A stretch of 64,000 bases of DNA from IMGVR_UViG_3300036781_000418:62001-126000; one strand, 5' to 3'. Numbered from the stretch's first letter, positions 13,500 through 61,724 are shown. Numbers and translations are program-made. Notes: generated from the sequence alone by a model not told the origin.

Positions 13500-13600
13500 T
13501 AGAGGCATTAGCTGACAGATAGTGCAGGTTCATGGTGCGGCGACACGAGAGGTCACCGGTGCGTCCCGAGACGGTGCGGTGTTGAACTCAACACCGCACC
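13500..13600 (-). repeat. Dispersed structured intergenic element, copy 1
   Basis: 13-bp hairpin (13573-13600), TCGTGTCGCCG, then the 34-nt core ATGAACCTGCACTATCTGTCAGCTAATGCCTCTA (13500-13533), which is shared with 39916-39949 and 61691-61724. Confidence 0.85.
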
Positions 13601-13610
13601 CACTTCAGTG

Positions 13611-13982
13611 TCACTCGGCCTCGTTCTTGATCCACTCGAGTGCAAGTTTCAGCTCCTCAATGAAGAGCTCTCCAGCCTCTTCAGCGTTGCTAAAAACCTT
13701 GCCATCCAGCTTGTTAAAGTTGCCGTCCATCTTGTACCAGCTGACCCGTGCACCCACTCGTGTGTCACGTGTCAAATCGTAACACAACGAAATAAACGGC
13801 AGTGGTTCATAAGAATCATTCGATATTACCTCGACAACACCTTGATTGTCCTTTAGCTCGTAGGTAATGGTCTTGTGCTTGAGCATCTTTGCGCAGAGTG
13901 CGGTCGCCTGCTTGGCCACCAACCCCGCGTGAAACTTGGCTTCTTCAAAGCCGTCAGATTCAAATAGTTGAGCTACGTTCAT
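13611..13982 (-). CDS. Putative internal head protein, CTS-like leader family (123 aa)
   Basis: MNVAQLFES leader. Clear paralog of 13979-14329 (LV.KQA.....KM.KH..I.YEL.D..G, WY..DG, EEAG.LF...LKLA). Confidence 0.7.
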   Translation of the reverse strand: MNVAQLFESDGFEEAKFHAGLVAKQATALCAKMLKHKTITYELKDNQGVVEVISNDSYEPLPFISLCYDLTRDTRVGARVSWYKMDGNFNKLDGKVFSNAEEAGELFIEELKLALEWIKNEAE

Positions 13983-14329
13983 GGCTTAGACTGCTCGTTG
14001 TACTCGCTCACCGCCAACTTTAGCTTACGCATGAAAAGCTGACCGGCCTCCTCAACGGTGTCGACAGTTTCAAGGTCGATCTCACCGTCCTGATACCATC
14101 CTACTTCAAACTCAGTGCCTGCGGAATGGTCGTCGCGTTTGATGAACGGCACCTCGTGCTCAACACCTTGCACCAATGTGACTGCGAGGCCTTCTTGGTC
14201 GTCAAGTTCGTAGTTGATCTCTTCATGCTTAATCATCTTTTCCAGATAGACGTTGGCCTGCTTTACGATGAGCTGCATGTGCAGGTGATCGTCTTCGTAG
14301 TCGCTTTCAAGTAGGTGTCGTAGTTTCAT
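13979..14329 (-). CDS. Putative internal head protein, CTS-like leader family (116 aa)
   Basis: MKLRHLLES leader, 4-nt coupled overlaps with both neighbours, paralog of 13611-13982. Confidence 0.7.
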   Translation of the reverse strand: MKLRHLLESDYEDDHLHMQLIVKQANVYLEKMIKHEEINYELDDQEGLAVTLVQGVEHEVPFIKRDDHSAGTEFEVGWYQDGEIDLETVDTVEEAGQLFMRKLKLAVSEYNEQSKP

Positions 14330-14685
14330 TGTTTATCCCCGTCATTGTCGCGCACCTTGTTAACGCGCTCGATCTCGTCCTTAAACACCTTCCAAGCGTC
14401 CGATGATTTTACGAACAGCTGTTCGTCCCAGCCAGTCTTACGCACAATTACCATGTAGTGGCGACCCATGTGGTCGCGCTCGTTCCACGCCATGATTGGG
14501 TAGTCAGAACCGATACGCGGCTGGATGTTAATGACGTGTGCCGTACCTGAGCCCATGTACATAATCCGGTACTCTGGAGCCGGTGCCAGCTTCTTCGCCT
14601 TGATGAGGAACAGCTGCATGTCCTCATCAGCATGTTCTGGAACGGTGCTGTCGACTTCGTCTTCCAAGAGTGAGTTAAGCTTCAT
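14326..14685 (-). CDS. Putative internal head protein, CTS-like leader family (119 aa)
   Basis: MKLNSLLED leader and DEDMQLF helix shared with the family. Translationally coupled. Confidence 0.7.
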   Translation of the reverse strand: MKLNSLLEDEVDSTVPEHADEDMQLFLIKAKKLAPAPEYRIMYMGSGTAHVINIQPRIGSDYPIMAWNERDHMGRHYMVIVRKTGWDEQLFVKSSDAWKVFKDEIERVNKVRDNDGDKQ

Positions 14686-15821
14686 GTTGATCCCTCTCCT
14701 CGGCTGTGCTTGTCGTTCGCCTCTTTGATCAGCTTTAGCAAGTGCACGTAGGCCTCGGTAATGTCGACATAGTGCGCCTCGATTATATCCGACAAACTAA
14801 CAAAGAAGTGCGCAAAGTGGTTGCCGATCCGACGTTTGCTACTAGCCCAGGTTGTAAAACCAATTGACGGAAATGGAACGTGCGAATTGTTGACCGGACG
14901 CAGCGCAAAGATGCCCTCTTTTGTTTTATAAAATTTGTATCGCACCGCGGCTTTTTGATTGATGGCCTTAAGCAACAGCCCCATGTCTTCGTTGTAACCT
15001 TTAACGGTTTCTGAATTGAGTTTATCGCCAAATTCGCTCTCATAAAGTTTGGCATCATTGCACTTGTCAATTTCAACCAACATAAACTTAAGAGCCTCGG
15101 CTACCGTCTTAAACTCAAAGTTAACGTGGCCTGGATGGTGGCTTGGACGCTTAACGGTCACAAAGATGTTCTTGCCATTTTTGCTCCAAAACCTGGTCTT
15201 GCTGTATTGCATTACCGGATATTTTGACGATTTATGTTCAGGAACGATGTCGAAGCTCTTCATGTCATCGTCGTTGCTGCTAATCTTGTACGACACCTTA
15301 GCCCGCTTGTTGATGGCGATGGCTGCGAGGTGCATGTCTTCAATGGTGCCACGGTACTCCTCTTCTGAGTGAGTTGAGGTGGACCTTTGACCTTCATGCA
15401 AGGCGTACACATGGTACGTGATGTTCTTGACGGCGTCAGGCTCCGCGGCCTTGTACTGTGGAAAGTTCTTCTTAAACAGCCGACTGTAGATTCGAGCTCG
15501 CTGTTCACCCTGTGGATCATCTTCGACGCTCCACAGGAACCGCTTTGGATGGTGAAGGTCGATGAACTCCTGAACGGCGGCCGTGAAGAAGCCGAACACC
15601 TCGAGGGCGGCGTGGTCGTTGGTTGGCTTCGCGGACGCGTAGGACGCGGACGAAGACGTGTCGTAGAAGGCGATCTCCCAGGCCTCTTCATCCTCGTTGA
15701 AGTCGCAGACGACGGTGATTGGCCGACCAGCAATCTTCTTACGAACCTTGAACATCGTCGGGGTGTTCTTAACCAGCTCGTAGTTGGCCCGGCCAGGGCT
15801 GAGAATTTCATCGAGCTTCAT
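14682..15821 (-). CDS. Three-module putative internal head protein (379 aa)
   Basis: MKLDEILS start and two internal repeats (EDM.L...AIN..A.V.YK), each preceded by LHE/LYE. Confidence 0.75.
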   Translation of the reverse strand: MKLDEILSPGRANYELVKNTPTMFKVRKKIAGRPITVVCDFNEDEEAWEIAFYDTSSSASYASAKPTNDHAALEVFGFFTAAVQEFIDLHHPKRFLWSVEDDPQGEQRARIYSRLFKKNFPQYKAAEPDAVKNITYHVYALHEGQRSTSTHSEEEYRGTIEDMHLAAIAINKRAKVSYKISSNDDDMKSFDIVPEHKSSKYPVMQYSKTRFWSKNGKNIFVTVKRPSHHPGHVNFEFKTVAEALKFMLVEIDKCNDAKLYESEFGDKLNSETVKGYNEDMGLLLKAINQKAAVRYKFYKTKEGIFALRPVNNSHVPFPSIGFTTWASSKRRIGNHFAHFFVSLSDIIEAHYVDITEAYVHLLKLIKEANDKHSRGEGST

Positions 15822-16188
15822 AGCTCAACCTTTCCTTAAGCAGGTCAAAGAACAGCTTTGACGCGTCTGTAAACCGCAGGAGCCGCGTGTATACACGTCT
15901 ATTGTCAGATCCAGGATGGTTGCACGTGACCACGAAGTGTTTCGGTACAACGCCACGCTGCGCTCGCTCCTCAATGAACACGTTAAGGTTTGGATAACCG
16001 TCGGTCCATTGCGCACTGTTCAAGCTAAGTACTGGACTTCGTGTGGTTCCATTCTGTTGAACTGCATACAGGTTGTTTGTCAACTTACGAGTAAGCTCCA
16101 GCGCCAAGTCCATGTCATCCGCAGCGTCAGCCCATTCGGCTTCGCTCATTCGGTGAACATCGGCTTGTTCGAAGATATCAAGCTTCAT
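15808..16188 (-). CDS. Putative internal head protein, CTS-like leader family (126 aa)
   Basis: Start re-assigned to MKLDIFEQ at 16188, which overlaps the upstream gene end. DDMDLAL helix. Confidence 0.7.
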   Translation of the reverse strand: MKLDIFEQADVHRMSEAEWADAADDMDLALELTRKLTNNLYAVQQNGTTRSPVLSLNSAQWTDGYPNLNVFIEERAQRGVVPKHFVVTCNHPGSDNRRVYTRLLRFTDASKLFFDLLKERLSYEAR

Positions 16189-16537
16189 GCTGTAGCTCCA
16201 AGCGTTCACGGAACGCCTTGAACGCCTCACTTGAGGTCTCGTAGTATTTGAAAAACCTAGAGTTGCCGTCGGTCCAGCCTTCTCTGACTGCGTAGTGCAG
16301 GATAGATCCATCTTTACGCTTACCGTTTTTCTTAAGTATCATGATAGGCTGACCGATAACATGACCAACTGGAACTAGACACATGCTGTCAATTGCCTTA
16401 ACGATGTGAAACTTTCCACCAGCAGCGTTCAAGATGTCACAGCACAGCTGTAGTTGATCAAGTTCGGCTGCCCAGTCCTCTGGGTTCATGGCGTTGAAGA
16501 ATGTTTTGCCGGCCTCGTGCAGTTGATCAAGCTTCAT
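16178..16537 (-). CDS. Putative internal head protein, CTS-like leader family (119 aa)
   Basis: MKLDQLHEA leader and EDWAAELDQLQL..DILN helix similar to both neighbours. Confidence 0.7.
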   Translation of the reverse strand: MKLDQLHEAGKTFFNAMNPEDWAAELDQLQLCCDILNAAGGKFHIVKAIDSMCLVPVGHVIGQPIMILKKNGKRKDGSILHYAVREGWTDGNSRFFKYYETSSEAFKAFRERLELQHEA

Positions 16538-16935
16538 TTCAGCGCCTCAGCTTCCTTGACGTACGTCATAAAGGTTTCCACTACCTCGTTAAGGTTTCCA
16601 GAAATGGATGCTGTAGCCCATCCTCGATGTGAACCTCTATGAGCGGTAAAGTGGGTTGGCGTTGCACCTACATTAACCGTGGTCTTTCTCCAAACCCAAA
16701 TTGTCGGGTAGGTTATCATGGATTTTTTAGGCTCTAGTATGGCGAAGCTGTTCGTTGGTGAATCCTTGTTTACCAACCTGATAATGTACTGGATGCCACT
16801 TAGGCGCTTGTTGAGTACGTCTGCCAACAAATCAAGGTTCTCAAGACCTTTGTGCCAGCTTTCTTTGTCTAGTACCATCACCTGGTTCCGCTGGCGAGCG
16901 CTGGGCTTTCTAACTGGAAGGCGGCCATCAAACAT
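16534..16935 (-). CDS. Paralog of the internal-protein family whose leader appears frameshifted (133 aa)
   Basis: ESWHKGLENLDLLADVLN helix matches the family. An out-of-frame ATG AAA GCT AAC sits at 16948. Confidence 0.65.
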   Translation of the reverse strand: MFDGRLPVRKPSARQRNQVMVLDKESWHKGLENLDLLADVLNKRLSGIQYIIRLVNKDSPTNSFAILEPKKSMITYPTIWVWRKTTVNVGATPTHFTAHRGSHRGWATASISGNLNEVVETFMTYVKEAEALK

Positions 16936-16947
16936 GGTTAGCTTTCA

Positions 16948-19900
16948 TCACTTCACCTGCCGAATGATCGTTGGGGTCAGGGCCTCGACCACGTCGATGT
17001 CCGCCACGGTAGCGGCCGACTGGAGGATCTCGTCGCCACCACACTGGACCGTGAACATGTCACCGAACGAGTTGGTGGAGTACAGCGGCACCAGCACAAC
17101 CGAGGCGATCTCCGTTGGAAGACGCTGGTGCATCAAGGAGATGAGCTCGGTAGCGTAGAACGTCTCGCCAAAGTCCCAGTTACTGATCTCAAAGTACGTG
17201 TTGATGACGTTCAGCAGCTCCTCCTTGACGCGCTCGTTCGTCAAGGACGCTCCAGAGGAGCGTACCACCTTGAACTTAGCGCGGAGCTGAGGCTCAGCTA
17301 GCTGACCAAACATCAGGCGCAGGGAACCAGGGTGGAACACCACCGTGTCGGCCAGCATCTTGTTGGTAAGCAGGTAACCGTATGAGTTGCGCAGCTCCAG
17401 TGGAGTCGGCGGCGTTGGCTTCGTCGTGCTCAACCCACGGACGAACGCGATCATGGAGTCGTAGTAACCTTGGGTCACCACGTAGGCGTCGTGGATGTTC
17501 GTCGACGACGGGTCGATAATGTTGTTGAACGGGGTAAAGTGCTGCCACATGAACGTCAAGCCATCGTCCGTGTTTGGCCCAGGCATCTTCAAGCGACGTC
17601 CCCAAAGGTTGGAGATGTCGGAGAAGGAGCCGTCGTTGGCGAACGACGTGACCGGCTGTCCACCTGAATCCTGAGGAATCGATGGGTACGTGACGGTTGG
17701 ATCACTCAACGCGAAGTATTCGTAGTTGCCCTCGCCAAACGTCTCGAACTGTAGGAGCCGGTCAGGGATCAAGTCACCGGACGAGTCCTCCTGCAGCATG
17801 TCGGACGGTACCACCGAGAGCTGGTTAAAGTCTGGAATGCCCGATGAGTCCTTCACCGCACCAACCACGTCGTAGATCTGCGACTTAGTTAGGTAGGAGT
17901 AGTTTGGGGCGACACCGTACTGGTTGCCAGGCAGGACCTTGATGTTGTCGAAGACGCGCTTCTTCGTTTCGTTGTCGAGGATCTGCTCAGCGTCGTTGTA
18001 CCAGAACTTCGTGGTCGGTGATTCGACGATCAGCGCCAAGTCACGGTAGTTGATCTCGTAGCCAATGACGTTGTTGGACGGTGCTTGGCGCAGCTTGCGA
18101 ATCAAAATGATCCATGAGTGCTGCTTCTGGGACACGTCCGTGTTGTTCAAGTTGAACAGCTGGTCGGCAAACGGTGGCAGGGTAGTGGTTGTATAGTCTG
18201 GGAGCTGGGAGGCGCCCGACAGAATCTCCCACCAGCCGTTCAAGTTGACCGTTGGGCGGCCACTAAACGTGCGTTGGGTCAGGGTACCGTCGATCGCTGG
18301 GTCCATGTCAGAGGCCGTGTCCAGCACAAACGCGTCGCCTGGCTCAAAGGCGGCACCGCCCGTCGTCTGGTTGACCGTGGCGAACATGATCGAGGACGTG
18401 AAGCCGGCCGGTTGAATGTAGATCGCCGAGCCGATGGTGTCCTTGCCCGTCGAGATGGTTCCACGCAGGTTGGAGCGAACCGAAAGGGTCTCGCCGTCGG
18501 CGCCTACTTGAATCGTCCAAACTTCACCCACGTAGTAGGTTGGGCGGACCGCTGGGTCGGCTTCCTGCTTGACGGGCACCTTGTTGTGGACGGTAATCGT
18601 GCCTTCACCAACGCCGGCCGTGTACGGGTTGTAGCGCAGACCGAAGTAGTCTTGGTCAGCGATTGGCTGCAGACCGGAACCGACGTCGCCTGGTGGGTAC
18701 TTGTTGATGCCGTCGATCGTGCGTGGGACGGCGGCCGCGTAGATGCGTGAGTCGTCCTTTGGGTTCAGCGTTGGGTCTGGAATGACGGCCCAAATCTTGT
18801 TGTCTGAGCCTTCGATGAACTCGAGTGGCTCGCCGTACCAGTGACGGTCGATCAGGCCTTGGATAGCCGTCTTCTCCTTCAACGAACCGTCTGGGACGGA
18901 GCCGTCAAGGATGTTGACGAACGCGTTGTTTAGAGTGCGCCACAGTCCAGCACGGTTGTCCTCGATGAAGACACGACGTGGTGGAGCGACGACCCCTTGG
19001 AGCAGTGGATCCGCCGCACCGATGTGAACCAGCATGTTGATCACGCCGGTGTCGTTGAGCAGCGGCTCGATGACGTTGTCGATCAACGCCTGCCCAGTGG
19101 TCGACACGGTGGTCGAGTTCAGGGTGAGGTTGTAGCGCATGGACAGGTCGTCACCGAACAGCTTGACGTTCTCGTACTGTCCCGACGCATCGTTCCAGTC
19201 AATGTACTTTGGCTGACCCGCAAACGTGCGGTTGACCGTCTTCAGACGGAGAATTGACGGGTCGCGTAGTGGGAAGGTGTTGTAGTCCTGCCCATTGACC
19301 ATGCGGTTCTGGGCGTAGTACGTGGCTGGAGCGGACTGACGGATGTGCTCGATCGTCTCCGAACCGGCGCCGTTCTGCAGGGTCGTCGTCAGGGAAAACG
19401 TGAGGGCGCACGTCTCGGTGTTACCGTTGGTCGCGGTGTAGGTGAACGACAATGGTTGGTTGACCACCTTGTTCTTCTGCACGACGACGGCCTTGTTGAT
19501 GGACTGCCGCATCCAGAACCGGAAGGAACCCTGTGGGGCCTCCGAGAAGTCACCGTCACCGAACAGGATGGCGATCTGGTCGTTCTCCAGCGTGTCCACT
19601 TCGTACTTAAAGCGGGTGGAGCGGTCGTCGTTGAAGATGAGGTTCTGCTCGGCCACCGTATCAACTTCGGTCCAACGTTCGGCGATCTCACCTTGGTCGT
19701 TCAGGCGCTGCACCCAGACGTCGGTTGAGTTGACGTTGTTTGGCAGGAACTCAAGGCGGCGATTCGGCAGCTTGTCCGTGATGTCGTACTCGATGCGGGT
19801 GATGGTGCCCTGCTTCGTGAAAGCCAGGAAGCCGGTGTAGTCGGAGCCGTCGCCCACTCCGTCGTTCGCGTAGATGATGGTAAACGGTGAGTTCAAGTCT

Positions 19901-20574
19901 GGCTCACGTTCAAACGGGCCGTTCTCGTCCAAGTCGGCCGGCACGACCTCCATCGGCACGGAGTCCAACCCCGTGTTGGCCGTGTAGGCGTACACCCCGT
20001 TGATGAAGGAGTTGTCGTCCGCGTTCAGGGAGTAGAGGTCCATGACCACGTCGTTCACCTGGAACGACTTCTGTGGCTGACCGTAGCGGGTTGTCAAAAC
20101 ACGGTTCACGACGAGCGTGAACTGCTCCTTCCAGTTAGGGTTGTTTGGGTCGTTCCAGTTGATGACCTGCCCGGAGATATCGACGCCACGGGAGTCGATC
20201 ACACGCTCCGTCGTGGAGATTGAGGAGAACTTTACCAGGCCACGGGACGCGATGTTCCGAGTCGCCTTGTACGAGATCAGCTTCGCCAGGCGCAGGATGG
20301 ACTGCTTCCGCTGGGCGGTTGTGATGAAGTTTTCATGGGCCACCATGTCCACACGGTAGGCCAGCTGTTCCGCGACGTAGGCAAACGACTCGATGTACGC
20401 GATCAGCTCGGAGCTGGCGATCAAGTCGTTGAAGACCTCGGGGTAGTAGATCCGGAGGTAGTCGATCAACGACGCCCGAATGGTGTCGAAGTCAAAGGAG
20501 GTGAAGTTGACCTGGCTGAAGGCCTGGTATACGGCCTCCCAGCTTTCAGCCGAGTTGGTGTTCCGGAACGTCAT
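16948..20574 (-). CDS. gp6: Baseplate wedge subunit, gp6-like (~1208 aa)
   Basis: FTSFDFDTIRASLIDYL...FNDLIASSELIAYIE, ENFITTAQRKQSILRLAKLISY and ETIEHIRQSAP..Y.AQNRMVNGQDY are gp6 hallmarks. Start moved to MTFRNT at 20574, downstream of TAAATA at 20601. Confidence 0.9.
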   Translation of the reverse strand: MTFRNTNSAESWEAVYQAFSQVNFTSFDFDTIRASLIDYLRIYYPEVFNDLIASSELIAYIESFAYVAEQLAYRVDMVAHENFITTAQRKQSILRLAKLISYKATRNIASRGLVKFSSISTTERVIDSRGVDISGQVINWNDPNNPNWKEQFTLVVNRVLTTRYGQPQKSFQVNDVVMDLYSLNADDNSFINGVYAYTANTGLDSVPMEVVPADLDENGPFEREPDLNSPFTIIYANDGVGDGSDYTGFLAFTKQGTITRIEYDITDKLPNRRLEFLPNNVNSTDVWVQRLNDQGEIAERWTEVDTVAEQNLIFNDDRSTRFKYEVDTLENDQIAILFGDGDFSEAPQGSFRFWMRQSINKAVVVQKNKVVNQPLSFTYTATNGNTETCALTFSLTTTLQNGAGSETIEHIRQSAPATYYAQNRMVNGQDYNTFPLRDPSILRLKTVNRTFAGQPKYIDWNDASGQYENVKLFGDDLSMRYNLTLNSTTVSTTGQALIDNVIEPLLNDTGVINMLVHIGAADPLLQGVVAPPRRVFIEDNRAGLWRTLNNAFVNILDGSVPDGSLKEKTAIQGLIDRHWYGEPLEFIEGSDNKIWAVIPDPTLNPKDDSRIYAAAVPRTIDGINKYPPGDVGSGLQPIADQDYFGLRYNPYTAGVGEGTITVHNKVPVKQEADPAVRPTYYVGEVWTIQVGADGETLSVRSNLRGTISTGKDTIGSAIYIQPAGFTSSIMFATVNQTTGGAAFEPGDAFVLDTASDMDPAIDGTLTQRTFSGRPTVNLNGWWEILSGASQLPDYTTTTLPPFADQLFNLNNTDVSQKQHSWIILIRKLRQAPSNNVIGYEINYRDLALIVESPTTKFWYNDAEQILDNETKKRVFDNIKVLPGNQYGVAPNYSYLTKSQIYDVVGAVKDSSGIPDFNQLSVVPSDMLQEDSSGDLIPDRLLQFETFGEGNYEYFALSDPTVTYPSIPQDSGGQPVTSFANDGSFSDISNLWGRRLKMPGPNTDDGLTFMWQHFTPFNNIIDPSSTNIHDAYVVTQGYYDSMIAFVRGLSTTKPTPPTPLELRNSYGYLLTNKMLADTVVFHPGSLRLMFGQLAEPQLRAKFKVVRSSGASLTNERVKEELLNVINTYFEISNWDFGETFYATELISLMHQRLPTEIASVVLVPLYSTNSFGDMFTVQCGGDEILQSAATVADIDVVEALTPTIIRQVK

Positions 20575-20600
20575 GTAGTGGATCGAGGTTAGCGATCCAC

Positions 20601-20606
20601 TATTTA
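20601..20606 (-). promoter_or_regulatory. Late promoter TAAATA
   Basis: Lies ~27 nt upstream of the gp6-like start. Confidence 0.7.
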
Positions 20607-20615
20607 GCCAGAACC

Positions 20616-21870: not shown

Positions 21871-21904
21871 GGACCGGTTGAACCGGTGTCGCCTCGTGTC
21901 GCCG
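21871..21904 (-). repeat. Partial copy of the dispersed element (5' block only)
   Basis: CGGCGACACGAGGCGAC (21888-21904, minus) is identical to 39814-39830. An ACCGGT palindromic pair is adjacent, and the 34-nt core is absent. Confidence 0.6.
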
Positions 21905-27540: not shown

Positions 27541-27541
27541 G

Positions 27542-37859: not shown

Positions 37860-37884
37860 TAGGCCTGAGTGTCAGGCCTATTTA
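37860..37884 (-). promoter_or_regulatory. Late promoter TAAATA overlapping a 9-bp hairpin
   Basis: TAAATA 37879-37884. Stem TAGGCCTGA/TCAGGCCTA at 37860-37880, just upstream of the ATG at 37854. Confidence 0.65.
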
Positions 37885-37888
37885 CTCA

Positions 37889-39813: not shown

Positions 39814-39949
39814 CGGCGACACGAGGCGACGACGGCGTCGCTCGGTCGGTCTACATACTGTACCTTACACGTCGTCGACCTTAGGTGCACCGGTGACACC
39901 GGTCGTCGCCGTAACGTGAACCCGCACTATCTGTCAGCTAATGCCTCTA
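39814..39949 (+). repeat. Dispersed structured intergenic element, copy 2
   Basis: CGGCGACACGAGGCGAC (39814-39830), CGTCGCTCGGTCG, a variable middle, GTCGTCGCCG, then core GTGAACCCGCACTATCTGTCAGCTAATGCCTCTA (39916-39949). Confidence 0.85.
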
Positions 39950-42021: not shown

Positions 42022-42882
42022 TCAGGACCTCAGCAGCGCGTAACCCGATTCAGCCGAGTTGAACGTCACCGTGAACTGATTCGAGTTGTCATAGGTCACG
42101 TCGGCCGGCTGAACCGGCTTCACCCCACCGACGGTGTTCACGAAGAAGGAGTGCATGCAGATGAACGGTGCTGCCAGGTTCATGTTGTGCACGATGATCC
42201 AGGTAGTCGAGGTCACGGACTGTGTGTACCTGAACGACGTGCCCGCACTGGCTGAGTTAGCCACGGACCAGATGTTCGACGGTGAACCTGACCAGATCAT
42301 CAATGAACCTGACGTGGTGTTGTACCAGGTCTGTCCCTGGAACGGATTCAGCGGTGCGGACGGGCCGGCAAAGTTCTGAATGGACATGATCAGGTTGTCC
42401 TGCATGCCCTCACCCCACATGATTGCGTCACGTCCGAAGAGGTTGATCGGTCGATCCGTATAGAGCTGACGCTCAAGGACCAACTTGCTGGCTTCGCCGG
42501 TAATCGGCAGCAGGTAGGTGCTGACGTTGTTGACGCTGCCAGTCGTCAGCTCCGCGCCGGTACCAGCCGGAAGTGTATCACGTAGAAAGATGCGGGTGTT
42601 ACCGCCGACCAGGGCGACCGACACGTTCGGATCTGAGTTGGAAGTCGGCGTGTAGACCGTGTAGGTGCCGGTAAACCGATCATTGTCCACCAGCTGCAGG
42701 GTGGTGGCTGGCAAGACGGTCGTGTCGGCCGGTTGCGCTTGGTAGTACGGGGTCCGAACTCCGGCCGAACTGATCCACTCCTTACCATGGAACATGGCGG
42801 TGTAGTCAAGGGCGACCTCAAGGTACGACAGCACGCCGGGACCTGAGCTTGGAACGATGTTGACGATGGCTAGAATGTTCAT
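42022..42882 (-). CDS. Virion structural protein, probably fibre- or baseplate-associated (286 aa)
   Basis: QNFAGPSAPLNPFQGQTWYNT motif typical of jumbo-phage structural proteins, and a W.I.HN(L)-type C-terminal beta domain. Late promoter upstream. Confidence 0.72.
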   Translation of the reverse strand: MNILAIVNIVPSSGPGVLSYLEVALDYTAMFHGKEWISSAGVRTPYYQAQPADTTVLPATTLQLVDNDRFTGTYTVYTPTSNSDPNVSVALVGGNTRIFLRDTLPAGTGAELTTGSVNNVSTYLLPITGEASKLVLERQLYTDRPINLFGRDAIMWGEGMQDNLIMSIQNFAGPSAPLNPFQGQTWYNTTSGSLMIWSGSPSNIWSVANSASAGTSFRYTQSVTSTTWIIVHNMNLAAPFICMHSFFVNTVGGVKPVQPADVTYDNSNQFTVTFNSAESGYALLRS

Positions 42883-42885
42883 GCG

Positions 42886-42912
42886 AAAATAGGACCGTGT
42901 AGGTCCTATTTA
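42886..42912 (-). promoter_or_regulatory. Late promoter TAAATA in the 5' arm of a 10-bp hairpin
   Basis: AAATAGGACC 42887-42896 pairs with GGTCCTATTT 42902-42911. Confidence 0.68.
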
Positions 42913-42918
42913 GTGAGC

Positions 42919-43116
42919 TCACCACATGCCGTCGGTGAACCATTCCTGCTCAGAGCTTCGCTTCTCTCGATTGTCCTGCTCGATCATCTCTTGCATGGTG
43001 GTGTAGACGTTCTCACCACAGTCTAGACAGCACTCAGTGAAGGTCTGCATGTTCCGGTGCTTGCAGCTTTGGAAGCGCTCGATGCGCTTCGCCAGCTTCT
43101 GAGAGTCCCAGGTCAC
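42919..43116 (-). CDS. Small Zn-ribbon-like hypothetical protein (65 aa)
   Basis: GTG start overlapping the upstream TGA. CKH...CCLDCG motif. Confidence 0.55.
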   Translation of the reverse strand: MTWDSQKLAKRIERFQSCKHRNMQTFTECCLDCGENVYTTMQEMIEQDNREKRSSEQEWFTDGMW

Positions 43117-43697
43117 GTGTACAGCTTCTCGAGCAAACCGACGTTGTCGCCGTGGACTGGGGCCACCCAGCCAGTCGGCTTGATCATGTCCGGCAAGCCG
43201 AGCGGATTTGGGCGCTCTGGCTTGATGCCAGGTTCCTTCTGCATGTTGGCGGCCATGACGCGAGTCCAAGCTTCGTCCGCGTCGACGTCGAGGGCGTTCA
43301 GTGTGCCGATCGCCACGACACAGAGGTCGATCATCGCGTCCACGACGTCGTCGGCCGCGGAGTTGCCGTTCGCCTTGGCCGCTTCACCGTTGACGGTGGA
43401 CGAGCTCAGCAGCACAGCGTAGGCGGTCTTGGCCTCGTCCAACTCTTCCTGTAGGAAGTTCAGACGGAACTGGAGGTAGGCCAGCAGCTTTGACTTGTCG
43501 AACTGACTGACGGCGTCGTTGACGCCGAACTTGTGATGCATCTCGGAGATGTCGTACACCCACTCTGATGGTTCAGCGTGTCCCTCACCAATGGAGGCCA
43601 AGGCGTTGATCAGGCTCTGAGCGCCCGTTCGAGCTTCCTCGCCCAGGGCGGACAGCTCCTTGTTGATTTCATTGATTGCGTTTCGTAGATCGGACAT
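43113..43697 (-). CDS. MazG-like / PRA-PH all-alpha NTP pyrophosphohydrolase (194 aa)
   Basis: LQEELDE...VVDAMIDL.VVAIG...AW.RVM.AN..K, plus a D(M/L)IKP.GW.AP C-terminus. Confidence 0.85.
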   Translation of the reverse strand: MSDLRNAINEINKELSALGEEARTGAQSLINALASIGEGHAEPSEWVYDISEMHHKFGVNDAVSQFDKSKLLAYLQFRLNFLQEELDEAKTAYAVLLSSSTVNGEAAKANGNSAADDVVDAMIDLCVVAIGTLNALDVDADEAWTRVMAANMQKEPGIKPERPNPLGLPDMIKPTGWVAPVHGDNVGLLEKLYT

Positions 43698-49042: not shown

Positions 49043-49045
49043 GGG

Positions 49046-50566: not shown

Positions 50567-51201
50567 TACTTAGCGTCCTTGATCTTCTTAGCCATGATCT
50601 TAGCCACGTTGTCGGGCAAGCCAGTAATCACCTTGAACTTGTCGTGCATGTCCTTCCGAGCGGCGGTGCGTGCCAACGTGCCGGAGACCAGCTCCAGTGG
50701 AATTTCGTCGGTCATGTTGTTCAAGATTTCGTCGGAGCCACCACTGTCGTCAGAATCTTCATCACGGCCGACGTTGATCATGTAGTGCTTGATTGGCTGC
50801 TCGTCGTCCGTCTTCAGGTACTTGTTCATCAGGTCCACGTACGTGCGCCCACGGTCCGAGCCGGTCATGACGACCAACGGCTCCTTGCCCTGCTCACGTA
50901 GCTTGTTCAGGGCCGCCATGACGTCGTTGGCGTGTACGAAGTTGATGCCGTCCGCCTTACCGGACGCCTGCATAAACTTGATGCGGTCCTCAGGCGAGAG
51001 TGGGTTACGGTTCTTATCCTGTCCAGACTTCTCACCATGGATCACCGCAACGACCGGGGTCACGTCGAGGTTGAGCTCCTTGCCCTTCGGTCCACGCGTC
51101 GCCTTCTTGGCCCGTTCAAAGAGGGCGTAGTGGGCGATGGTCGGCGGTTGAAACCGCCCAAACATGACCAGCACCGGTGTACGAGATGTGGGATTTGCCA
51201 T
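50566..51201 (-). CDS. Cytidylyltransferase-like (HIGH-superfamily) nucleotidyltransferase (211 aa)
   Basis: FGRFQPPTIAH, NPLS..DR..FM, V.TGSDR and SGT.AR motifs. Start MANPTSR at 51201, after TAAATA at 51230-51235. Confidence 0.85.
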   Translation of the reverse strand: MANPTSRTPVLVMFGRFQPPTIAHYALFERAKKATRGPKGKELNLDVTPVVAVIHGEKSGQDKNRNPLSPEDRIKFMQASGKADGINFVHANDVMAALNKLREQGKEPLVVMTGSDRGRTYVDLMNKYLKTDDEQPIKHYMINVGRDEDSDDSGGSDEILNNMTDEIPLELVSGTLARTAARKDMHDKFKVITGLPDNVAKIMAKKIKDAK

Positions 51202-53489: not shown

Positions 53490-53490
53490 C

Positions 53491-56101: not shown

Positions 56102-56128
56102 TAAATAGGGGAGCAATGCTCCCCTATT
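56102..56128 (+). promoter_or_regulatory. Late promoter TAAATA overlapping an 11-bp hairpin
   Basis: TAAATA 56102-56107. Stem AATAGGGGAGC/GCTCCCCTATT, ATG at 56133. Confidence 0.68.
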
Positions 56129-56132
56129 CCAC

Positions 56133-56792
56133 ATGAAGCTCAACATCTTCGAGGCGCCGCCCTCCATCACCCGTAAGGTTCACCCGGACGCCATCAAGGG
56201 ACCCGCATGGATGAACAACATGGGGCTAACTGACCTCGCCGATCGATGGAAAAGCCGTACCAAGGAGGTGGACGGCGACGTGTTGATGGTCAATAACCAG
56301 CTGAAGAACCTTAAGGGCGGCCCGACGATCATCCATGGGACGTACAACGCCTCTAAGAACAAGTTGACGACGTTTGAAGGGTCCCCCACCTACGTGTCAA
56401 AGGACTTCATCGTCTACGGCAACCGGCTAACTGACTTTCTTGGACTGCACATTGAAGTCGGTGGTGACGTGGACCTTAGCAACAACCTGTTCAGGTCCCT
56501 GAAGGACATCCACAAGCACATCCTACACACCAAGACGCTGTCCATTGAGGACAACCCAATCGAGTCGCACGTGCTTGGGATCTTCAAGATCAAGGGCCTG
56601 GAAGCCCTCGAGTTCTTTCCGCAGAACGACGTAAACCCCAAAGGCATAACGGCTGACTACACAGAAACGGACAACAAGGTAGCCAAGATCGTCAACGACT
56701 GCTTCAAGGCTCACGGTGCGACGAACGTCGGCCTGTTGGAGTGCCAGGAACAGTTGATCGACGCCGGCTTCCATGAATACGCCCAGCTGTAA
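56133..56792 (+). CDS. Leucine-rich-repeat-like protein with CTS-like leader (219 aa)
   Basis: NQLKNLKGGP, NKLTTFEGSP, NRLTDF and NLFRSL repeats. MKLNIFEA start. C-terminus CQEQLIDAGFHEYAQL. Confidence 0.82.
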   Translation: MKLNIFEAPPSITRKVHPDAIKGPAWMNNMGLTDLADRWKSRTKEVDGDVLMVNNQLKNLKGGPTIIHGTYNASKNKLTTFEGSPTYVSKDFIVYGNRLTDFLGLHIEVGGDVDLSNNLFRSLKDIHKHILHTKTLSIEDNPIESHVLGIFKIKGLEALEFFPQNDVNPKGITADYTETDNKVAKIVNDCFKAHGATNVGLLECQEQLIDAGFHEYAQL

Positions 56793-56819
56793 ATACAACC
56801 TGAACCTACCAGGACCAAC

Positions 56820-58108: not shown

Positions 58109-58911
58109 AGCTACTTCAGGCGCTGTGTGAAGATACTCGAAAGATGAAGATGAAGGATGGGTCGTCCTACCGCATCGTTGAAAGCCCAAACACGCGTACC
58201 ATCTACATCGAAGAAACCGAGACAGGTGACCTAACGCCGTTCCATGGTCAATGGGAGCATATGCGCGAGGGCTTTGAGCACATGATTAAAATCAGTATTA
58301 CCTACGGTAGAATTGGCGGCTTCAACAGCTTCCACGGACTGCCAGCCGAGATCTGTGAGCACGCTGAGTTTAAGTTGGCGGGCAATGACTACATGGACAA
58401 GCTTCAAGGCTGGCCTAGTGGTGGTGAACCATACAGCTTCACGATTGAAAACGCCGCCCTCTCTACCTTTGAAGGTTTTCCAGACAAGTTTGGACACGAT
58501 CTTTCAGTTGAAAACGTTCCCATTAAGTCGTTCAAGGGCTTCCCATCTAACGTTGGCTATTCCTGCAACCTACATGATCTTGACGTAGTTGACTTCACCG
58601 GTGCTACTGGATCTACTGGGCGCAACGTTGACCTTCGCCGTTGTCATGAACTAAAGTCGTTCCGTGGCATTGACAAGCTGTTCAGCGGTGGTTTGGCAAG
58701 CACCTTGTCGATTGATAAGGTGCGTTCAATGAAGCATATCCTGCACGTCATGAACGTTCCAAATCTCCGATTTGTCAGCTTCTCTGACAACACACCCTTG
58801 TCACTACTCATCAACGAACACCTCGATGCCGGTCACGGCAAGGCGGGCGTTGTTCACCTTCAAAACGCCCTGCTCGATGCGGGGTATGACGAAGAGTTCG
58901 CTAGCCTTTAA
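58105..58911 (+). CDS. Leucine-rich-repeat-like protein with CTS-like leader (268 aa)
   Basis: FNSFHGLP, LSTFEGFP, IKSFKGFP and LKSFRGI repeats. C-terminus LQNALLDAGYDEEFASL. Confidence 0.8.
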   Translation: MKLLQALCEDTRKMKMKDGSSYRIVESPNTRTIYIEETETGDLTPFHGQWEHMREGFEHMIKISITYGRIGGFNSFHGLPAEICEHAEFKLAGNDYMDKLQGWPSGGEPYSFTIENAALSTFEGFPDKFGHDLSVENVPIKSFKGFPSNVGYSCNLHDLDVVDFTGATGSTGRNVDLRRCHELKSFRGIDKLFSGGLASTLSIDKVRSMKHILHVMNVPNLRFVSFSDNTPLSLLINEHLDAGHGKAGVVHLQNALLDAGYDEEFASL

Positions 58912-58920
58912 GGAGCCACC

Positions 58921-59091
58921 ATGCTGTTTACCGCTATTTGCCTCTTCATGCTTGGCCTGTTGTGGGGTGGTGCCAGGTGGCTAACTAACTGCGAGCATGA
59001 GTTTGAGCTGGTCATCCATGAGGAGGACGAGCTAGGTTACGCCTACACCGTCAAACGCTGTAAAGTCTGCGGCGAAGAGCGCGATACCTAA
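58921..59091 (+). CDS. Small membrane-anchored protein with a C-H/CxxC Zn-finger-like motif (56 aa)
   Basis: Below the ORF-track cutoff. AGGAG RBS. Translation MLFTAICLFMLGLLWGGARWLTNCEHEF...KRCKVCGEERDT. Confidence 0.6.
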   Translation: MLFTAICLFMLGLLWGGARWLTNCEHEFELVIHEEDELGYAYTVKRCKVCGEERDT

Positions 59092-59147
59092 GTCAGCCGC
59101 CGACCCTAAATAGGTCAGATCGTTCTGATCTGACTCATTCCATATAC

Positions 59148-59717
59148 ATGACTGAAAAACTAGAGAAGCCCAAGCGCAAGATGCGCCCTGGAGGGGGTAA
59201 GGCGAAGGGTAACGGCTTTGAAGGCCAGGTAGCCAAGAAGCTTTCAGCCGCCCTACCCATCAACTTCATCCGCTCACCTGGGTCAGGAGCCCGTGTCGGT
59301 GGCAAGAACTTCGACAAGCTCGGCGCGCTGTTCGGGGCCGAGGCCATGAAGCTCTTCAGCGCGGACGTGGTTCCAATCAACGAGAAGGAGGCGGGCTGCA
59401 CGTTCCGCTTCTCGGTGGAGTGCAAGTCGTACGCGACGTCTGACAACTTCGTTGCGCTAGCCAGTGGAACGGCCAACATCTTCGCATGGTTCCAAGAGTC
59501 CGTGGTTGACGCGGCGAAGACTGACCGCCATCCAATGTTGATCGCCCACTGGAACCGCTCTCCCAACTACGTCTTCGTTCGTCCTTGGCATATGCCACAG
59601 GCCGTCAAGCCAGTTCTCACGTTGATTCACCGCAACGAAGAAGGCTTTGGTGAAACCCTTGACGTCTACATTCTTGAAGACCTGTTGAAGCACCCTGAAC
59701 TTTGGATTGCCAAATGA
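59148..59717 (+). CDS. Holliday junction resolvase, Hjc-type PD-(D/E)XK (189 aa)
   Basis: K.KGNGFE..VAK.LS, R.PGSGA, ADV and FSVECK motifs. TAAATA at 59107-59112 followed by an 8-bp hairpin. Confidence 0.85.
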   Translation: MTEKLEKPKRKMRPGGGKAKGNGFEGQVAKKLSAALPINFIRSPGSGARVGGKNFDKLGALFGAEAMKLFSADVVPINEKEAGCTFRFSVECKSYATSDNFVALASGTANIFAWFQESVVDAAKTDRHPMLIAHWNRSPNYVFVRPWHMPQAVKPVLTLIHRNEEGFGETLDVYILEDLLKHPELWIAK

Positions 59718-60295
59718 TTACCAACCCTCGCTGGACCATCCGCGCGGACGCCGTTCGCCCAGACGGCAACTACTCTGACTTGCTGTCACAAGTCCGTCGT
59801 CACTACGACATGTACTGCTCCGCTGAGCAGTTCCTTGGCCCCTACAACGCCAAGGCCCGTGGCAAGACCATCTACGTGCCGCCATCGCGTGACATGATGC
59901 GTGAGCTGATTAAGCAATGTGGTGTCAACGACGTCACGTACTACGCCTTCCTGTCCTCGCTCGTTCGCTTCTGTGAGACGACCAAGGGCAACATGGCCCT
60001 GCCGTTGGCCCATCCGTCGACCGTGCACTCAATTCAGCTGCCTGAAGGCACGTTCGAACTGCGTCAGCAGGAGCACTCAAAGCCGGTGCTGCAGCTTGGC
60101 GTAGGTGATCCAGTCGAGCTGCGCGGTGACGTGAAGGGCAAGGTCGGCTTCGCAATCTTGCGTCCACGCATGACCCAACGAGGCATGACCTCGGCGACGC
60201 AGTGGGAGGCCCTCCTGTTCGAACACCGTCATGGTTACCTACCTATCTGGACCGACTCAGGTGTCAATCCTCGGTGGGCTGGCTCCCTGACCTAA
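59714..60295 (+). CDS. Hypothetical protein resembling the TnpB N-terminal REC/WED half, with no RuvC (193 aa)
   Basis: ATGA-coupled to the resolvase. Colinear, by-eye resemblance to IS605 TnpB N-terminal motifs (see findings). Unverified. Confidence 0.5.
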   Translation: MITNPRWTIRADAVRPDGNYSDLLSQVRRHYDMYCSAEQFLGPYNAKARGKTIYVPPSRDMMRELIKQCGVNDVTYYAFLSSLVRFCETTKGNMALPLAHPSTVHSIQLPEGTFELRQQEHSKPVLQLGVGDPVELRGDVKGKVGFAILRPRMTQRGMTSATQWEALLFEHRHGYLPIWTDSGVNPRWAGSLT

Positions 60296-60303
60296 ACGGC
60301 TGG

Positions 60304-60331
60304 TTGTATGGTGCCGAGTAGCTTCTATAAT
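60304..60331 (+). promoter_or_regulatory. Sigma70-type promoter for the PolA-like ORF
   Basis: TTGTAT (60304-60309), 16-nt spacer, TATAAT (60326-60331). The ATG at 60341 would be nearly leaderless. Confidence 0.6.
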
Positions 60332-60340
60332 GGTCACTAC

Positions 60341-61585
60341 ATGTCACCATACAAGCTTCACCATCACCACGTTCCAGTGGACCACGTCCTCCACTGGTCG
60401 TTCTTCTGGCCTGACAAGCAGCGCATCCACAAGTCAAAGGTGCAGGTTCGACAGGACCTTGTGCTGTGGTTGGCCGCGGCCTGGGTTGGCTCAAGGTCGG
60501 GCCCACCGGCCCCAAACGGTTTTCGAGGTATCAAGGTTCGACTAACCTCGCTCCGAGAGCTGGTGCGTGACTTCCAGCCAGCCGTTGAGTTCTTCTTCAC
60601 CATCACCCAGCTAGGGTTCAACCTTGAGGACAACTTTGAGGTGAGCACCCTCGTACCGAAGACCCTGTCACCTGAGGCCACTCGTGTCATTGAGGCTGAA
60701 GTCCAGCTGATGAGCTACGTTCCGGCTGAACCGCCGACCGACGCGAACGTCTCGACGGTCTATATCCAATCCAACCTTGATGTTGAGGACCTGGTGCAGC
60801 GCACGTCCAGTGCCGGACGTGGTGAGCTTGTTCCACAGCTCCGTTGGTTGATTGCCCATGGACCTAGGCATGAGTTTCACTTCATGCCGTCTGGGCGTCT
60901 CCAACTGCGAGATACCAGCGTCTACCCCGTCATGGCGATTGAAACCTGGCCAGGTTGGTTGCGCGAGGAGTTGTTTGGGGCGGGCATTGACTTGGACGCA
61001 GCCTACATCCAGTTCCTGATGCACTGGCTCAAGGAGTCGTTCAATCGTTCCGAAGCGAAGCTCAAGCTGTACTTCCCAAGCCTCATGCGGCTGATGTACG
61101 ACAAGGAAGTTTACCGTCGAGAGCTCTGCGAAGAGGGCCTGAAGTTGGAGTACAACGACACGAACAAGTTGATGATCAAGCGGCTGATCATGTGCCTCGC
61201 CAACGGTTCACGCATTTCAGGAAAGATCCTTGTTCGTCGTACTGAATTTTCAGCCGCCACGGCCGTGCTGTTGGCGGCACTTCCTGACGCGACGGACGCC
61301 CAGCTCATTGAGGTTGGCGAGGTGCTTCGTCGAATCAACGACGAGTTTAACTCGGCGCGGCGGTACGTCTACATGGAGCTGAACGCCAAGCACCCTACGC
61401 GTAAGGCGATCAAGGAGGTCTTCATCGAGTACTTCATGTGGGAACGTGAAGCTCGATACGCCCTTTGGGAGGCGATCGACCGCCATGGCATCATGGTTCA
61501 CGACGGCATCGACGGTGTTCCAGCCGAGTACCGAGCTCGACTCGGCGAACTGATGGAGCAGCTTGACCTTCGCTTCTCAGTATAG
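60341..61585 (+). CDS. Minimal family-A polymerase-fold protein with no exonuclease domains (~414 aa)
   Basis: SGRLQ...LREELF..IDLDAA (pre-motif and motif A Asp), IKRL..CLANG (motif B-like) and IMVHDG (motif C). Start placed at 60341, after the TATAAT box. Confidence 0.7.
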   Translation: MSPYKLHHHHVPVDHVLHWSFFWPDKQRIHKSKVQVRQDLVLWLAAAWVGSRSGPPAPNGFRGIKVRLTSLRELVRDFQPAVEFFFTITQLGFNLEDNFEVSTLVPKTLSPEATRVIEAEVQLMSYVPAEPPTDANVSTVYIQSNLDVEDLVQRTSSAGRGELVPQLRWLIAHGPRHEFHFMPSGRLQLRDTSVYPVMAIETWPGWLREELFGAGIDLDAAYIQFLMHWLKESFNRSEAKLKLYFPSLMRLMYDKEVYRRELCEEGLKLEYNDTNKLMIKRLIMCLANGSRISGKILVRRTEFSAATAVLLAALPDATDAQLIEVGEVLRRINDEFNSARRYVYMELNAKHPTRKAIKEVFIEYFMWEREARYALWEAIDRHGIMVHDGIDGVPAEYRARLGELMEQLDLRFSV

Positions 61586-61588
61586 ACA

Positions 61589-61724
61589 CGGCGACACGAA
61601 GCGACGCCGTCGTCGCTCGGTCGTTGAAGGTGATGAGCCAAACAGACGAGGGACCCTAGGGTCCCTCGGTTCATTTCGTGTCGCCGCTACATGAACCCGC
61701 ACTATCTGCCAGCTAATGCCTCTA
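61589..61724 (+). repeat. Dispersed structured intergenic element, copy 3
   Basis: CGGCGACACGA (61589) pairs with TCGTGTCGCCG (61676-61686). Perfect 22-nt palindrome at 61647-61668. Core ATGAACCCGCACTATCTGCCAGCTAATGCCTCTA at 61691-61724. Confidence 0.88.

What the first reader, a model, noticed from the sequence alone, without database searches (positions are those of the whole stretch)
13500..61724. Dispersed structured non-coding element with a near-invariant 34-nt core, three full copies and one partial
Seen: RTGAACCYGCACTATCTGYCAGCTAATGCCTCTA occurs at 13500-13533 (-), 39916-39949 (+) and 61691-61724 (+), with only 1-2 differences between copies. Each core is preceded by a (T)CGT(G)TCGCCG-type arm. 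Copies 2 and 3 also share a 5' block (CGGCGACACGARGCGAC...CGTCGCTCGGTCG) able to pair with that arm, enclosing a variable hairpin-rich middle. Contexts differ (co-directional, divergent, convergent), so a simple promoter or terminator role does not fit. Inference: a family of ncRNA scaffolds, replication or recombination origins, or a non-autonomous mobile element.
Basis: partly seen in the sequence, partly recalled or inferred. Interest (0 to 1): 0.75.

Follow-up and report, generated by a model that had tools for sequence, protein, structure and literature searches.

The report
Evenly spaced promoter-like signal, jumbo phage
The repeated 34-base core is real, but it is best read as a short promoter-like DNA signal rather than a folded RNA; a clade of uncultured jumbo phages keeps about ten copies per genome at strikingly even ~30-kb intervals, in either orientation, and what it does is still unproven.

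Summary
The core occurs at 13500-13533(-), 39916-39949(+) and 61691-61724(+). The window lies in a 342.6-kb jumbo phage that has 11 copies, all intergenic.

The interpretation changes.
1. The "arm" and "5' block" are inverted copies of a second, independent intergenic repeat (motif B, ~21 copies). They show no covariation, and the core stays unpaired.
2. Only the 3' 23 nt of the core (CTATYTGYCAMCTAATGCCTSTA) is conserved in related phages, at 6-11 copies per genome.
3. One sister genome carries a homologous version with a perfect extended -10 (TGCTATAAT). So the element is laid out like a promoter: a recognition box, an AT-rich -10-like segment, then a GC-rich box.
4. Only 8 of 30 copies in three complete genomes face a gene start.
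5. Orientation flips at orthologous sites.
6. Sites turn over between genomes, yet spacing stays far more even than chance (CV ~0.26, p 2e-5 to 2e-4).
7. Copies within a genome evolve in concert.
8. One copy sits in an unrelated 34-kb phage.

There is no Rfam match and no copy in bacterial chromosomes. My best reading, at confidence about 0.4, is a phage-specific transcription-start signal used mostly for non-coding transcripts. An evenly spaced protein-loading or origin site remains a serious rival.

The parts
13500..13533 (-). Core copy 1 (c03 of 11 in the genome). It is co-directional with its flanking genes and lies 72 nt upstream of the 2918-aa virion protein gene.
13538..13559 (+). Motif B copy (4 mismatches) lying inverted next to core copy 1.
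13486..13501 (-). Small terminator-like hairpin formed by the last core bases plus the extension (CGGGCGAACTCG, then a T run).
13451..13457 (-). CTAAATA, a candidate T4-type late promoter, between core copy 1 and the start of the 2918-aa gene. It shows that the core is not the proximal promoter here.
21883..21904 (-). It has no core.
39814..39835 (+). Motif B copy, which is the '5' block' of copy 2.
39901..39911 (+). Degenerate arm (GGTCGTCGCCG) of copy 2.
39916..39949 (+). Core copy 2 (c04). It diverges from the 624-aa head-tail adaptor gene. A small ORF starts 13 nt downstream, and a second in-frame ATG about 39 nt downstream matches relatives.
61589..61610 (+). Motif B copy, which is the '5' block' of copy 3. 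It starts 4 nt after the stop of the 425-aa gene.
61647..61668 (.). Bidirectional intrinsic-terminator hairpin between the two motif-B copies.
61676..61686 (+). Arm of copy 3, an inverted half of motif B.
61691..61724 (+). Core copy 3 (c05), between convergent gene ends.
61725..61740 (+). Downstream extension (CGAGCGAGCGCTGTGT) shared by most G000 copies and by the 34-kb phage. It is homologous to the GCGCTGTG box of the sister genome G003, and it abuts the stop codon of the convergent gene.

Best explanation
The conserved unit is a double-stranded DNA signal of about 25-45 bp, not an RNA scaffold. It has three parts: a recognition box (CG-CTATYTGYCAMCTAATGC), an AT-rich -10-like segment (STAWWW, or TATAAT in one lineage) and a GC-rich box ((T)CGCGC, or CGAGCGAG..GCGCTGTG in this genome). 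I read it as a clade-specific transcription-start signal used by the host RNA polymerase together with an unidentified phage-encoded specificity factor. That would explain why the box is about 20 bp long, has no degenerate copies and changes in concert within each genome. The signal works independently of its neighbours. In a minority of copies it sits just before a gene start. In most it would launch a non-coding transcript, either antisense into the 3' end of the adjacent gene or, in several copies of this genome, a roughly 55-65-nt RNA ending at the next terminator hairpin. The even ~30-kb spacing suggests that what is selected is where these starts lie along the chromosome, for example priming or loading events as at the promoter-based T4 origins, rather than control of particular genes. 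Shown here: the anatomy, conservation, copy number, spacing, orientation statistics, site turnover and concerted evolution. Inferred: that transcription starts there, that a phage factor reads the box, and what the transcripts do. In this genome the core has also fused with half of another repeat (motif B) and with terminator hairpins, and that fusion produced the apparent 'structured element'.
For: 1. Relatives G002, G004 and G006 keep only the 23-nt motif, at 6-10 copies each, and 64 IMG/VR loci carry it. 2. Sister genome G003 has a homologous family of 9-10 copies with a perfect extended -10 (TGCTATAAT) followed by a GC-rich box, and it shares the GCGCTGTG extension with G000. 3. TAnnnT occurs at a fixed offset in 23 of 54 relatives' copies, against a 3% background, with +/-1 slippage typical of -10 elements. 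4. Positional equivalence: between the 624-aa and 616-aa virion genes, G002/G004/G006 and others have the motif 10-29 nt before the ATG, whereas G000 has a late-type GTAAATA there. 5. A terminator hairpin often abuts the motif's 5' side, as in PeSL cassettes (PMC4122927). 6. The family is all-or-none, with no degenerate copies at up to 6 mismatches, and every copy in a genome shares the lineage-specific variants. 7. There is no covariation or structure in the motif and no Rfam hit. 8. Spacing is even in four genomes, with site turnover. 9. T4 precedent: oriF and oriG are a promoter plus a downstream region, and their transcripts prime replication (PMC3016281).
Against: 1. No transcript data exist; no RNA run was listed. 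2. No sigma-70-type promoter is detected at the three window copies on either strand. In G000 the -10-like segment is TACGAG, and the last T of the hexamer varies even in the G003 type. 3. The box lies at about -33 to -14, where ordinary sigma factors do not read sequence, and no phage RNA polymerase, sigma-70-family sigma, MotA or AsiA was found, although three of those four searches had silent controls. 4. Only 8 of 30 copies face a gene start, 18 are antisense and 4 lie between convergent ends, and orientation flips at orthologous sites. 5. In G000 two co-directional copies have a late promoter between the core and the gene. 6. Even spacing is not expected of ordinary promoters. 7. There is no AT-rich unwinding element next to the motif.
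Confidence: 0.4

Rival explanations
1. The motif is an orientation-independent protein-binding site whose function depends on even distribution along the chromosome. It could be a replication origin or initiator site, a site-specific nick, or a loading site for a protein that slides or spreads over a limited range, such as a clamp or a partition or condensation protein. On this reading the AT-rich segment aids melting or bending rather than acting as a -10 element.
For: Spacing is far more regular than random in G000 (CV 0.27, p 2e-5), G003 (CV 0.26, p 6.5e-5), G004 (linear CV 0.25, p 2e-4) and G006 (linear CV 0.27, p 1.6e-3). Sites turn over between genomes while spacing is kept: G000 uses 234.6 and 278.2 kb where others use about 245 and 288 kb, and G000 lacks the 176-kb site. 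Orientation is independent of the flanking genes and flips at orthologous sites. The flanking genes share no function. The motif is a long, non-palindromic, all-or-none sequence.
Against: There is no iteron clustering (5 of 31 copies, near background) and no AT-rich unwinding region. No candidate binding protein was identified. The G003 version looks like a textbook extended -10, and the +/-1 slippage of the AT-rich segment fits a promoter better than a rigid binding site. The sites in the four genomes are partly orthologous, so the spacing statistics are not independent.
Confidence: 0.28
2. The element is a selfish or nearly neutral small repeat that spreads by recombination or gene conversion between intergenic hairpin regions. 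That would make it a PeSL-like mobile regulatory cassette or a MITE-like element with no function of its own.
For: Copies are homogeneous within a genome but carry lineage-specific versions. Sites are gained and lost, and orientation flips at the same intergenic site. One 60-nt copy, 90% identical to G000 copies, sits in an otherwise unrelated 34-kb phage that shares tail-fibre segments with G000 and so probably shares its host. In G000 the core travels with half of motif B at a fixed distance.
Against: The 23-nt box is conserved across phages whose shared proteins average only about 48-50% identity (sheath protein 64-70%) and whose other intergenic DNA is unalignable, which implies purifying selection. 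Even spacing is not expected of random insertion. There are no terminal inverted repeats or target duplications in relatives, and no transposase or homing endonuclease nearby. Rearrangement breakpoints do not coincide with copies. Copies are not concentrated in variable regions, unlike PeSLs (PMC4122927).
Confidence: 0.12
3. One reading: a family of structured non-coding RNAs of about 100-140 nt, in which the 5' block pairs with the arm around a variable hairpin-rich middle and presents the core.
For: In copy 3 the predicted fold closes the long-range stem, with z-scores of -2.6 on the + strand and -3.9 on the - strand. RNAalifold predicts the same stem in six full copies.
Against: The stem arms are inverted copies of motif B, which occurs at ten or more sites without any core. 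The covariation term is +0.7, with essentially no compensatory pairs in the stem. Copies 1 and 2 fold no better than shuffles, with z-scores of -1.2 and -0.6. Copies c01 and c02 have neither block nor arm. Relatives conserve nothing upstream of the motif. Orientation relative to transcription is inconsistent. There is no Rfam match.
Confidence: 0.05

Closest known systems
PeSL / PmSL composite terminator-promoter cassettes of T4-like myoviruses (Arbiol 2010, PMC2839356; Comeau 2014, PMC4122927)
   Same: Both are conserved intergenic repeats in a T4-related myovirus. Both have a stem-loop immediately upstream of a promoter-type sequence, lineage-specific consensus versions, and an implication in exchange between phages.
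   Different: PeSLs carry recognisable -35/-10 (or Mot-box/-10) promoters followed by an SD and ATG. They are numerous and cluster in hyperplastic regions next to indels. Here there are only about 10 copies, evenly spaced over the whole genome including the structural block. There is no -35, most copies do not face a gene start, and breakpoints do not coincide with copies.
T4 oriF/oriG promoter-based replication origins (Kreuzer and Brister 2010, PMC3016281)
   Same: This is a T4-like phage lineage that depends on the host RNA polymerase, with several dispersed sites. In both cases a promoter acts independently of any downstream ORF, and its transcript is itself the functional product.
   Different: [quoted passage not shown] Here one motif is shared by all sites and no such element is seen. 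No replication data exist.
Dedicated-polymerase or dedicated-factor phage promoters (T7-type 23-bp promoters; phage sigma or MotA-dependent promoters); comparison from my own knowledge, not tested against a database
   Same: They share a long, nearly invariant, non-palindromic consensus with no degenerate copies, and the consensus co-varies with lineage.
   Different: Those promoters point at genes and share the orientation of their operons. No phage polymerase, sigma-70-family sigma or MotA/AsiA was detected here.
Bacterial interspersed mosaic elements (BIME/REP); comparison from my own knowledge
   Same: In G000 the intergenic regions are mosaics of several short repeat modules (core, motif B, hairpins) in variable orientation near gene ends.
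   Different: REPs are imperfect palindromes in hundreds of copies, mobilised by RAYT transposases. The core here is non-palindromic, has about 10 copies and is phage-borne.

Membership tests
Any Rfam RNA family | A covariance-model match at or near the gathering score | tested here: not met
   There was no hit at the element in eight loci at E<=5, and none in the window at gathering scores. No tRNA or tmRNA was found.
   The RNAalifold covariation term is +0.7. The stem arms are invariant inverted copies of motif B, and the upstream part is not conserved in relatives.
Sigma-70-type promoter | -35 and -10 hexamers with a 16-18 bp spacer, or an extended -10 (TGnTATAAT) | tested here: inconclusive
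   None was found at the three window copies. A perfect TGCTATAAT is present in the homologous G003 family. TAnnnT occurs at a fixed offset in 23 of 54 relatives' copies. G000 has TACGAG.
PeSL/PmSL cassette | A stem-loop directly upstream of the promoter | tested here: inconclusive
   This is present in roughly a third of relatives' copies and in three G003 copies, and absent in others.
PeSL/PmSL cassette | The promoter is followed by the SD and start codon of a co-directional gene | tested here: not met
   Only 8 of 30 copies in three complete genomes are co-directional with a downstream gene.
PeSL/PmSL cassette | Clustered in hyperplastic regions next to indels or rearrangements | tested here: not met
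   Copies are evenly spaced, and synteny breakpoints are not at copies.
T4 oriF/oriG-type origin | [quoted passage not shown] | tested here: not met
   The mean GC profile shows only the motif itself at 41% GC and a weak dip (48%) at +40 to +60. There is no clear unwinding element.
T4 oriF/oriG-type origin | Initiates replication (nascent DNA peak, autonomous replication during infection) | not testable with these tools
   Only assembled contigs of one DNA run are available.
Iteron/initiator origin | Clustered direct repeats of the binding site | tested here: not met
   A secondary half-site lies within 200 nt in 5 of 31 copies, which is near background.
MITE / REP-like mobile element | Terminal inverted repeats or a palindromic unit, target-site duplication, and a cognate transposase | tested here: not met
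   The motif is non-palindromic. Relatives show no flanking inverted repeats. No transposase or homing endonuclease lies among the 20 flanking genes examined.
CRISPR repeat / solitary repeat unit | Identity to a host CRISPR repeat, or a repeat-spacer arrangement | tested here: not met
   There are no arrays: copies are 17-44 kb apart. No bacterial genome carries the core. The only true hits of the degenerate pattern in 'bacterial' records are phage contigs binned into one MAG.

The most novel reading that the evidence does not exclude
The motif is a 'milepost' system. A jumbo-phage clade keeps about ten copies of one sequence-specific site at regular ~30-35 kb intervals, replacing lost sites so that spacing is preserved. 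The reason would be that a process with a limited range along DNA has to start from them. Candidates are replication initiation from multiple sequence-defined origins, or loading of a sliding or spreading protein such as a clamp for late transcription or a partition or protection factor. Sequence-defined, evenly spaced multi-origin or loading architecture has not, to my knowledge, been described for a bacteriophage.
Probability: 0.25. Interest if true: 0.85.

Novelty: new variant of a known kind. Interest (0 to 1): 0.6.

Why it matters
Jumbo phages of this group have no polymerase of their own, and almost nothing is known about how they organise transcription and replication over about 340 kb. 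This work shows one short signal that is conserved across a clade, evolves in concert within each genome, ignores neighbouring genes and is kept at regular intervals despite site turnover. That points to a genome-scale cis-acting system rather than ordinary gene regulation. If it is a promoter class, it defines a new phage-specific recognition sequence and predicts an unknown specificity factor. If it is an origin or loading site, it would be the first sequence-defined, evenly spaced multi-site architecture in a phage. It also gives a simple sequence tag for recognising this uncultured clade, including phage contigs binned into bacterial MAGs.

Tried and rejected
1. Rfam at permissive thresholds and tRNA/tmRNA scans found nothing at the element.
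2. Host origin: two scans of 185,579 bacterial and archaeal genomes found no genuine chromosomal copy. Four contigs of a Pseudobdellovibrionaceae MAG are fragments of a related jumbo phage, and the other four hits lack the flanks and look like chance.
3. The metagenome hit L011 lies inside a LuxR-type gene and its flanks do not match, so it is judged chance. L151 and L153 are unrelated ~30-kb contigs with 20-mer matches, possibly chance.
4. Cultured relatives RsoM2USA, RAS14 and XacN1, and the uncultured relative G005, lack the motif. RsoM2USA has no comparable repeat family at all.
5. RNA evidence: no RNA run was listed, and only one DNA run held as contigs was found.
6. A sigma-54, ECF, DnaA-box, IHF, Ter or MotA-box resemblance was considered by eye and rejected, because spacing or invariant positions do not fit. 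This is my own reasoning, not a database test.
7. A virion RNA polymerase in the neighbouring 2918-aa protein was rejected: only decoration-like domains were found.
8. Searches for T7-type polymerase, Sigma70_r2, MotA and AsiA gave no hits, and the controls were silent for three of the four.
9. Motif-mediated inversion was rejected. The one inverted block (G000 ~81-107 kb versus G003 and G004) has breakpoints away from the copies.
10. No homing endonuclease or transposase was found next to any copy.
11. There is no link between copies and strand-switch boundaries.
12. No iterons or unwinding element were seen.


Full report
**Observation**

The degenerate 34-mer matches exactly three places in the window: 13500-13533(-), 39916-39949(+) and 61691-61724(+). 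No match is expected by chance. The window is positions 62001-126000 of a 342,591-bp virus record whose 127-nt "terminal repeat" is an assembly overlap. That genome has 11 copies of the 33-nt core with 0-3 differences and no further copies even at 6 mismatches. All 11 are intergenic.

**What phage this is**

The window encodes baseplate wedge, tail sheath, head-tail adaptor, giant virion proteins and an SbcC-like nuclease. The closest cultured relatives are Ralstonia phage RsoM2USA (sheath protein 53% identical) and the Stenotrophomonas and Xanthomonas jumbo phages. RsoM2USA has no annotated phage RNA polymerase (PMC8504454). I found no T7-type polymerase or sigma-70-family sigma in this genome. 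CTAAATA is strongly enriched in intergenic DNA (36 of 57 copies) and sits about 30 nt before the starts of structural genes, as expected of a T4-type late promoter.

**The "structured element" is a mosaic**

A k-mer survey shows a second, independent intergenic family, motif B (taCGGCGACACGAGGCGACGCCGGtt). It has about 21 copies at up to 5 mismatches, usually right after a stop codon, and at ten or more sites there is no core nearby.

- The "arm" is the inverted half of another motif-B copy.
- Between them lies an ordinary bidirectional terminator hairpin.

Folding closes the long stem convincingly only in copy 3 (z -2.6 and -3.9). Copies 1 and 2 fold no better than shuffles, and the core is unpaired. 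RNAalifold on six full copies gives a covariation term of +0.7, with near-invariant stem arms. Two copies (c01, c02) have neither block nor arm. Rfam finds nothing.

**The conserved unit**

Related 310-336-kb IMG/VR genomes (G002, G004, G006) carry 6-10 copies each of only the 3' 23 nt of the core, CTATYTGYCAMCTAATGCCTSTA. A scan of IMG/VR found 64 loci. The information profile shows conservation from a preceding CG through the motif, a few A/T, and then a weak CTCGCGCC-like box. Nothing is conserved further out.

G003 is as close by sheath identity but scored motif-negative. Its top repeat family is a homologous sequence, cCGCTATYTRKCAACTAATGC-TATAAT-TGTTGCGCGCTGTG, with 9-10 copies. This version shares the box and the GCGCTGTG extension with the present genome, and it contains a perfect extended -10 (TGCTATAAT).

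Other contigs of that type keep TATA(A/T)N followed by (T)CGCGC. In the main clade TAnnnT occurs at the fixed offset in 23 of 54 copies, against a 3% background, sometimes shifted by one base. Between the 624-aa and 616-aa virion genes, at least seven relatives have the motif 10-29 nt before the ATG, whereas this genome has a late-type GTAAATA at the same place. So the element has promoter-like anatomy. The window copies themselves fail a sigma-70 scan on both strands, and in this genome the AT-rich part has become TACGAG.

**Behaviour along the genome**

I made codon-usage gene calls in three complete genomes (30 copies in total).

| Context of the copy | Copies |
|---|---|
| Antisense to both flanking genes | 18 |
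| Co-directional with flanking genes | 8 |
| Between convergent gene ends | 4 |

- The motif abuts a stop codon in either orientation.
- Flank-to-genome mapping shows that many sites are orthologous across genomes.
- Orientation flips at the sites of c02, c05 and c07.
- The c04 site is shifted by one gene.
- Several sites exist in only some genomes.

Despite this turnover, spacing is much more even than random.

| Genome | CV of gaps | p |
|---|---|---|
| G000 (circular) | 0.27 | 2e-5 |
| G003 | 0.26 | 6.5e-5 |
| G004 (linear) | 0.25 | 2e-4 |
| G006 (linear) | 0.27 | 1.6e-3 |

These tests are not independent, because the sites are partly shared by descent.

The genomes are collinear except for one inverted structural block, and its breakpoints are not at copies. 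The flanking genes have unrelated functions and include no mobility genes. There is no iteron clustering and no clear AT-rich unwinding region. All copies in a genome share lineage-specific features: position 11 is G, C or A depending on lineage, this genome has its own 5' extension (TGAACCCGCA) and 3' extension (CGAGCGAG), and G003 has its TATAATTGTTGCGCGC. That means either concerted evolution or co-evolution with a reader.

**Outside the clade**

One copy of 60 nt, 90% identical to G000 copies and including this genome's specific extensions, lies after the spanin genes of an unrelated, complete 34-kb phage. That phage shares little else with G000 beyond tail-fibre segments, so the two probably share a host and exchanged the element. 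No bacterial chromosome carries the element. RsoM2USA has no comparable family.

**Interpretation**

An RNA scaffold is unlikely. I think the most likely reading (about 0.4) is a phage-specific transcription-start signal. A roughly 20-bp box would be read by an unidentified phage factor on the host polymerase. Most copies would launch non-coding or antisense transcripts. Their even placement hints at a chromosome-scale role comparable to the promoter-based origins of T4 (PMC3016281).

The main rival (about 0.28) is a transcription-independent protein-binding site, such as an origin, a nick site or a loading site. A selfish recombining repeat (about 0.12) explains the turnover, the flips and the horizontal copy, but not the deep conservation or the spacing.

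The nearest described elements are the PeSL/PmSL terminator-promoter cassettes of T4-like phages (PMC2839356, PMC4122927). This element fails three of their defining features: canonical hexamers, a downstream gene start, and clustering in variable regions. I therefore classify it as a new variant of a known kind rather than a member.

No transcript, replication or binding data could be obtained here.

Noticed in passing
G000 genome-wide, e.g. window 21883-21904(-), 39814-39835(+), 61589-61610(+): There is a second dispersed intergenic repeat, motif B (taCGGCGACACGAGGCGACGCCGGtt). It has about 21 copies, mostly in the sense orientation immediately after stop codons, and it contains a GGCGAC-N4-GGCGAC direct repeat. 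It was not among the top repeat families of G003 or G004, so it may be specific to this genome. Its function is unknown.
   Followed up: partly
window 13451-13457(-), 37879-37885(-); genome-wide: CTAAATA (also GTAAATA) lies about 25-30 nt before the starts of structural genes, and 36 of its 57 copies are intergenic. It is probably this clade's T4-type late promoter. About half of confident genes lack an obvious Shine-Dalgarno sequence.
   Followed up: partly
G000 ~81-107 kb (window ~19000-45000) versus G003 and G004: The tail and baseplate structural block is inverted and translocated relative to two otherwise collinear relatives. The breakpoints lie near G000 81-85.6 kb and 105.4-107.2 kb.
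   Followed up: partly
L002:2059-2132 (G000 51059-51132, + strand): There is a sub-threshold Rfam match to the Burkholderia sRNA anti-hemB (35.8 bits against a gathering score of 49.5, E 4e-5). It consists of a CU-rich hairpin loop plus a terminator, about 530 nt from copy c02.
   Followed up: no
G000 ~218-224 kb and ~254-255 kb (outside the window): Repeated T-arm k-mers (GGTTCGAATCC type) indicate clusters of phage tRNA genes. G003 and G004 have similar clusters.
   Followed up: no
G000 1946-2122, 42840-43591, 56378-56608, 283769-284059; G001 19103-20068: A multi-copy family of tail-fibre-like segments in the jumbo phage is shared with the 893-aa tail fibre of the unrelated 34-kb phage G001. 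This suggests a common host and exchange of receptor-binding modules.
   Followed up: no
L267, L269, L272, L274 (JBHIVS01 contigs 185, 148, 239, 93): Four small contigs of a 'Pseudobdellovibrionaceae' MAG are fragments of a related jumbo phage, with 50-75% amino-acid identity to G000 genes and each carrying the motif. This is either a binning artefact or a weak hint at the host.
   Followed up: partly
window 4671-13427(-) and upstream 1578-aa gene (G000 61399-66135): Two giant virion-protein genes (2918 aa and 1578 aa) lie in tandem. The larger has Ig-like or decoration-like domains (PDB 9nx3 capsid decoration protein, E 3e-5) and no recognisable enzymatic domain.
   Followed up: partly
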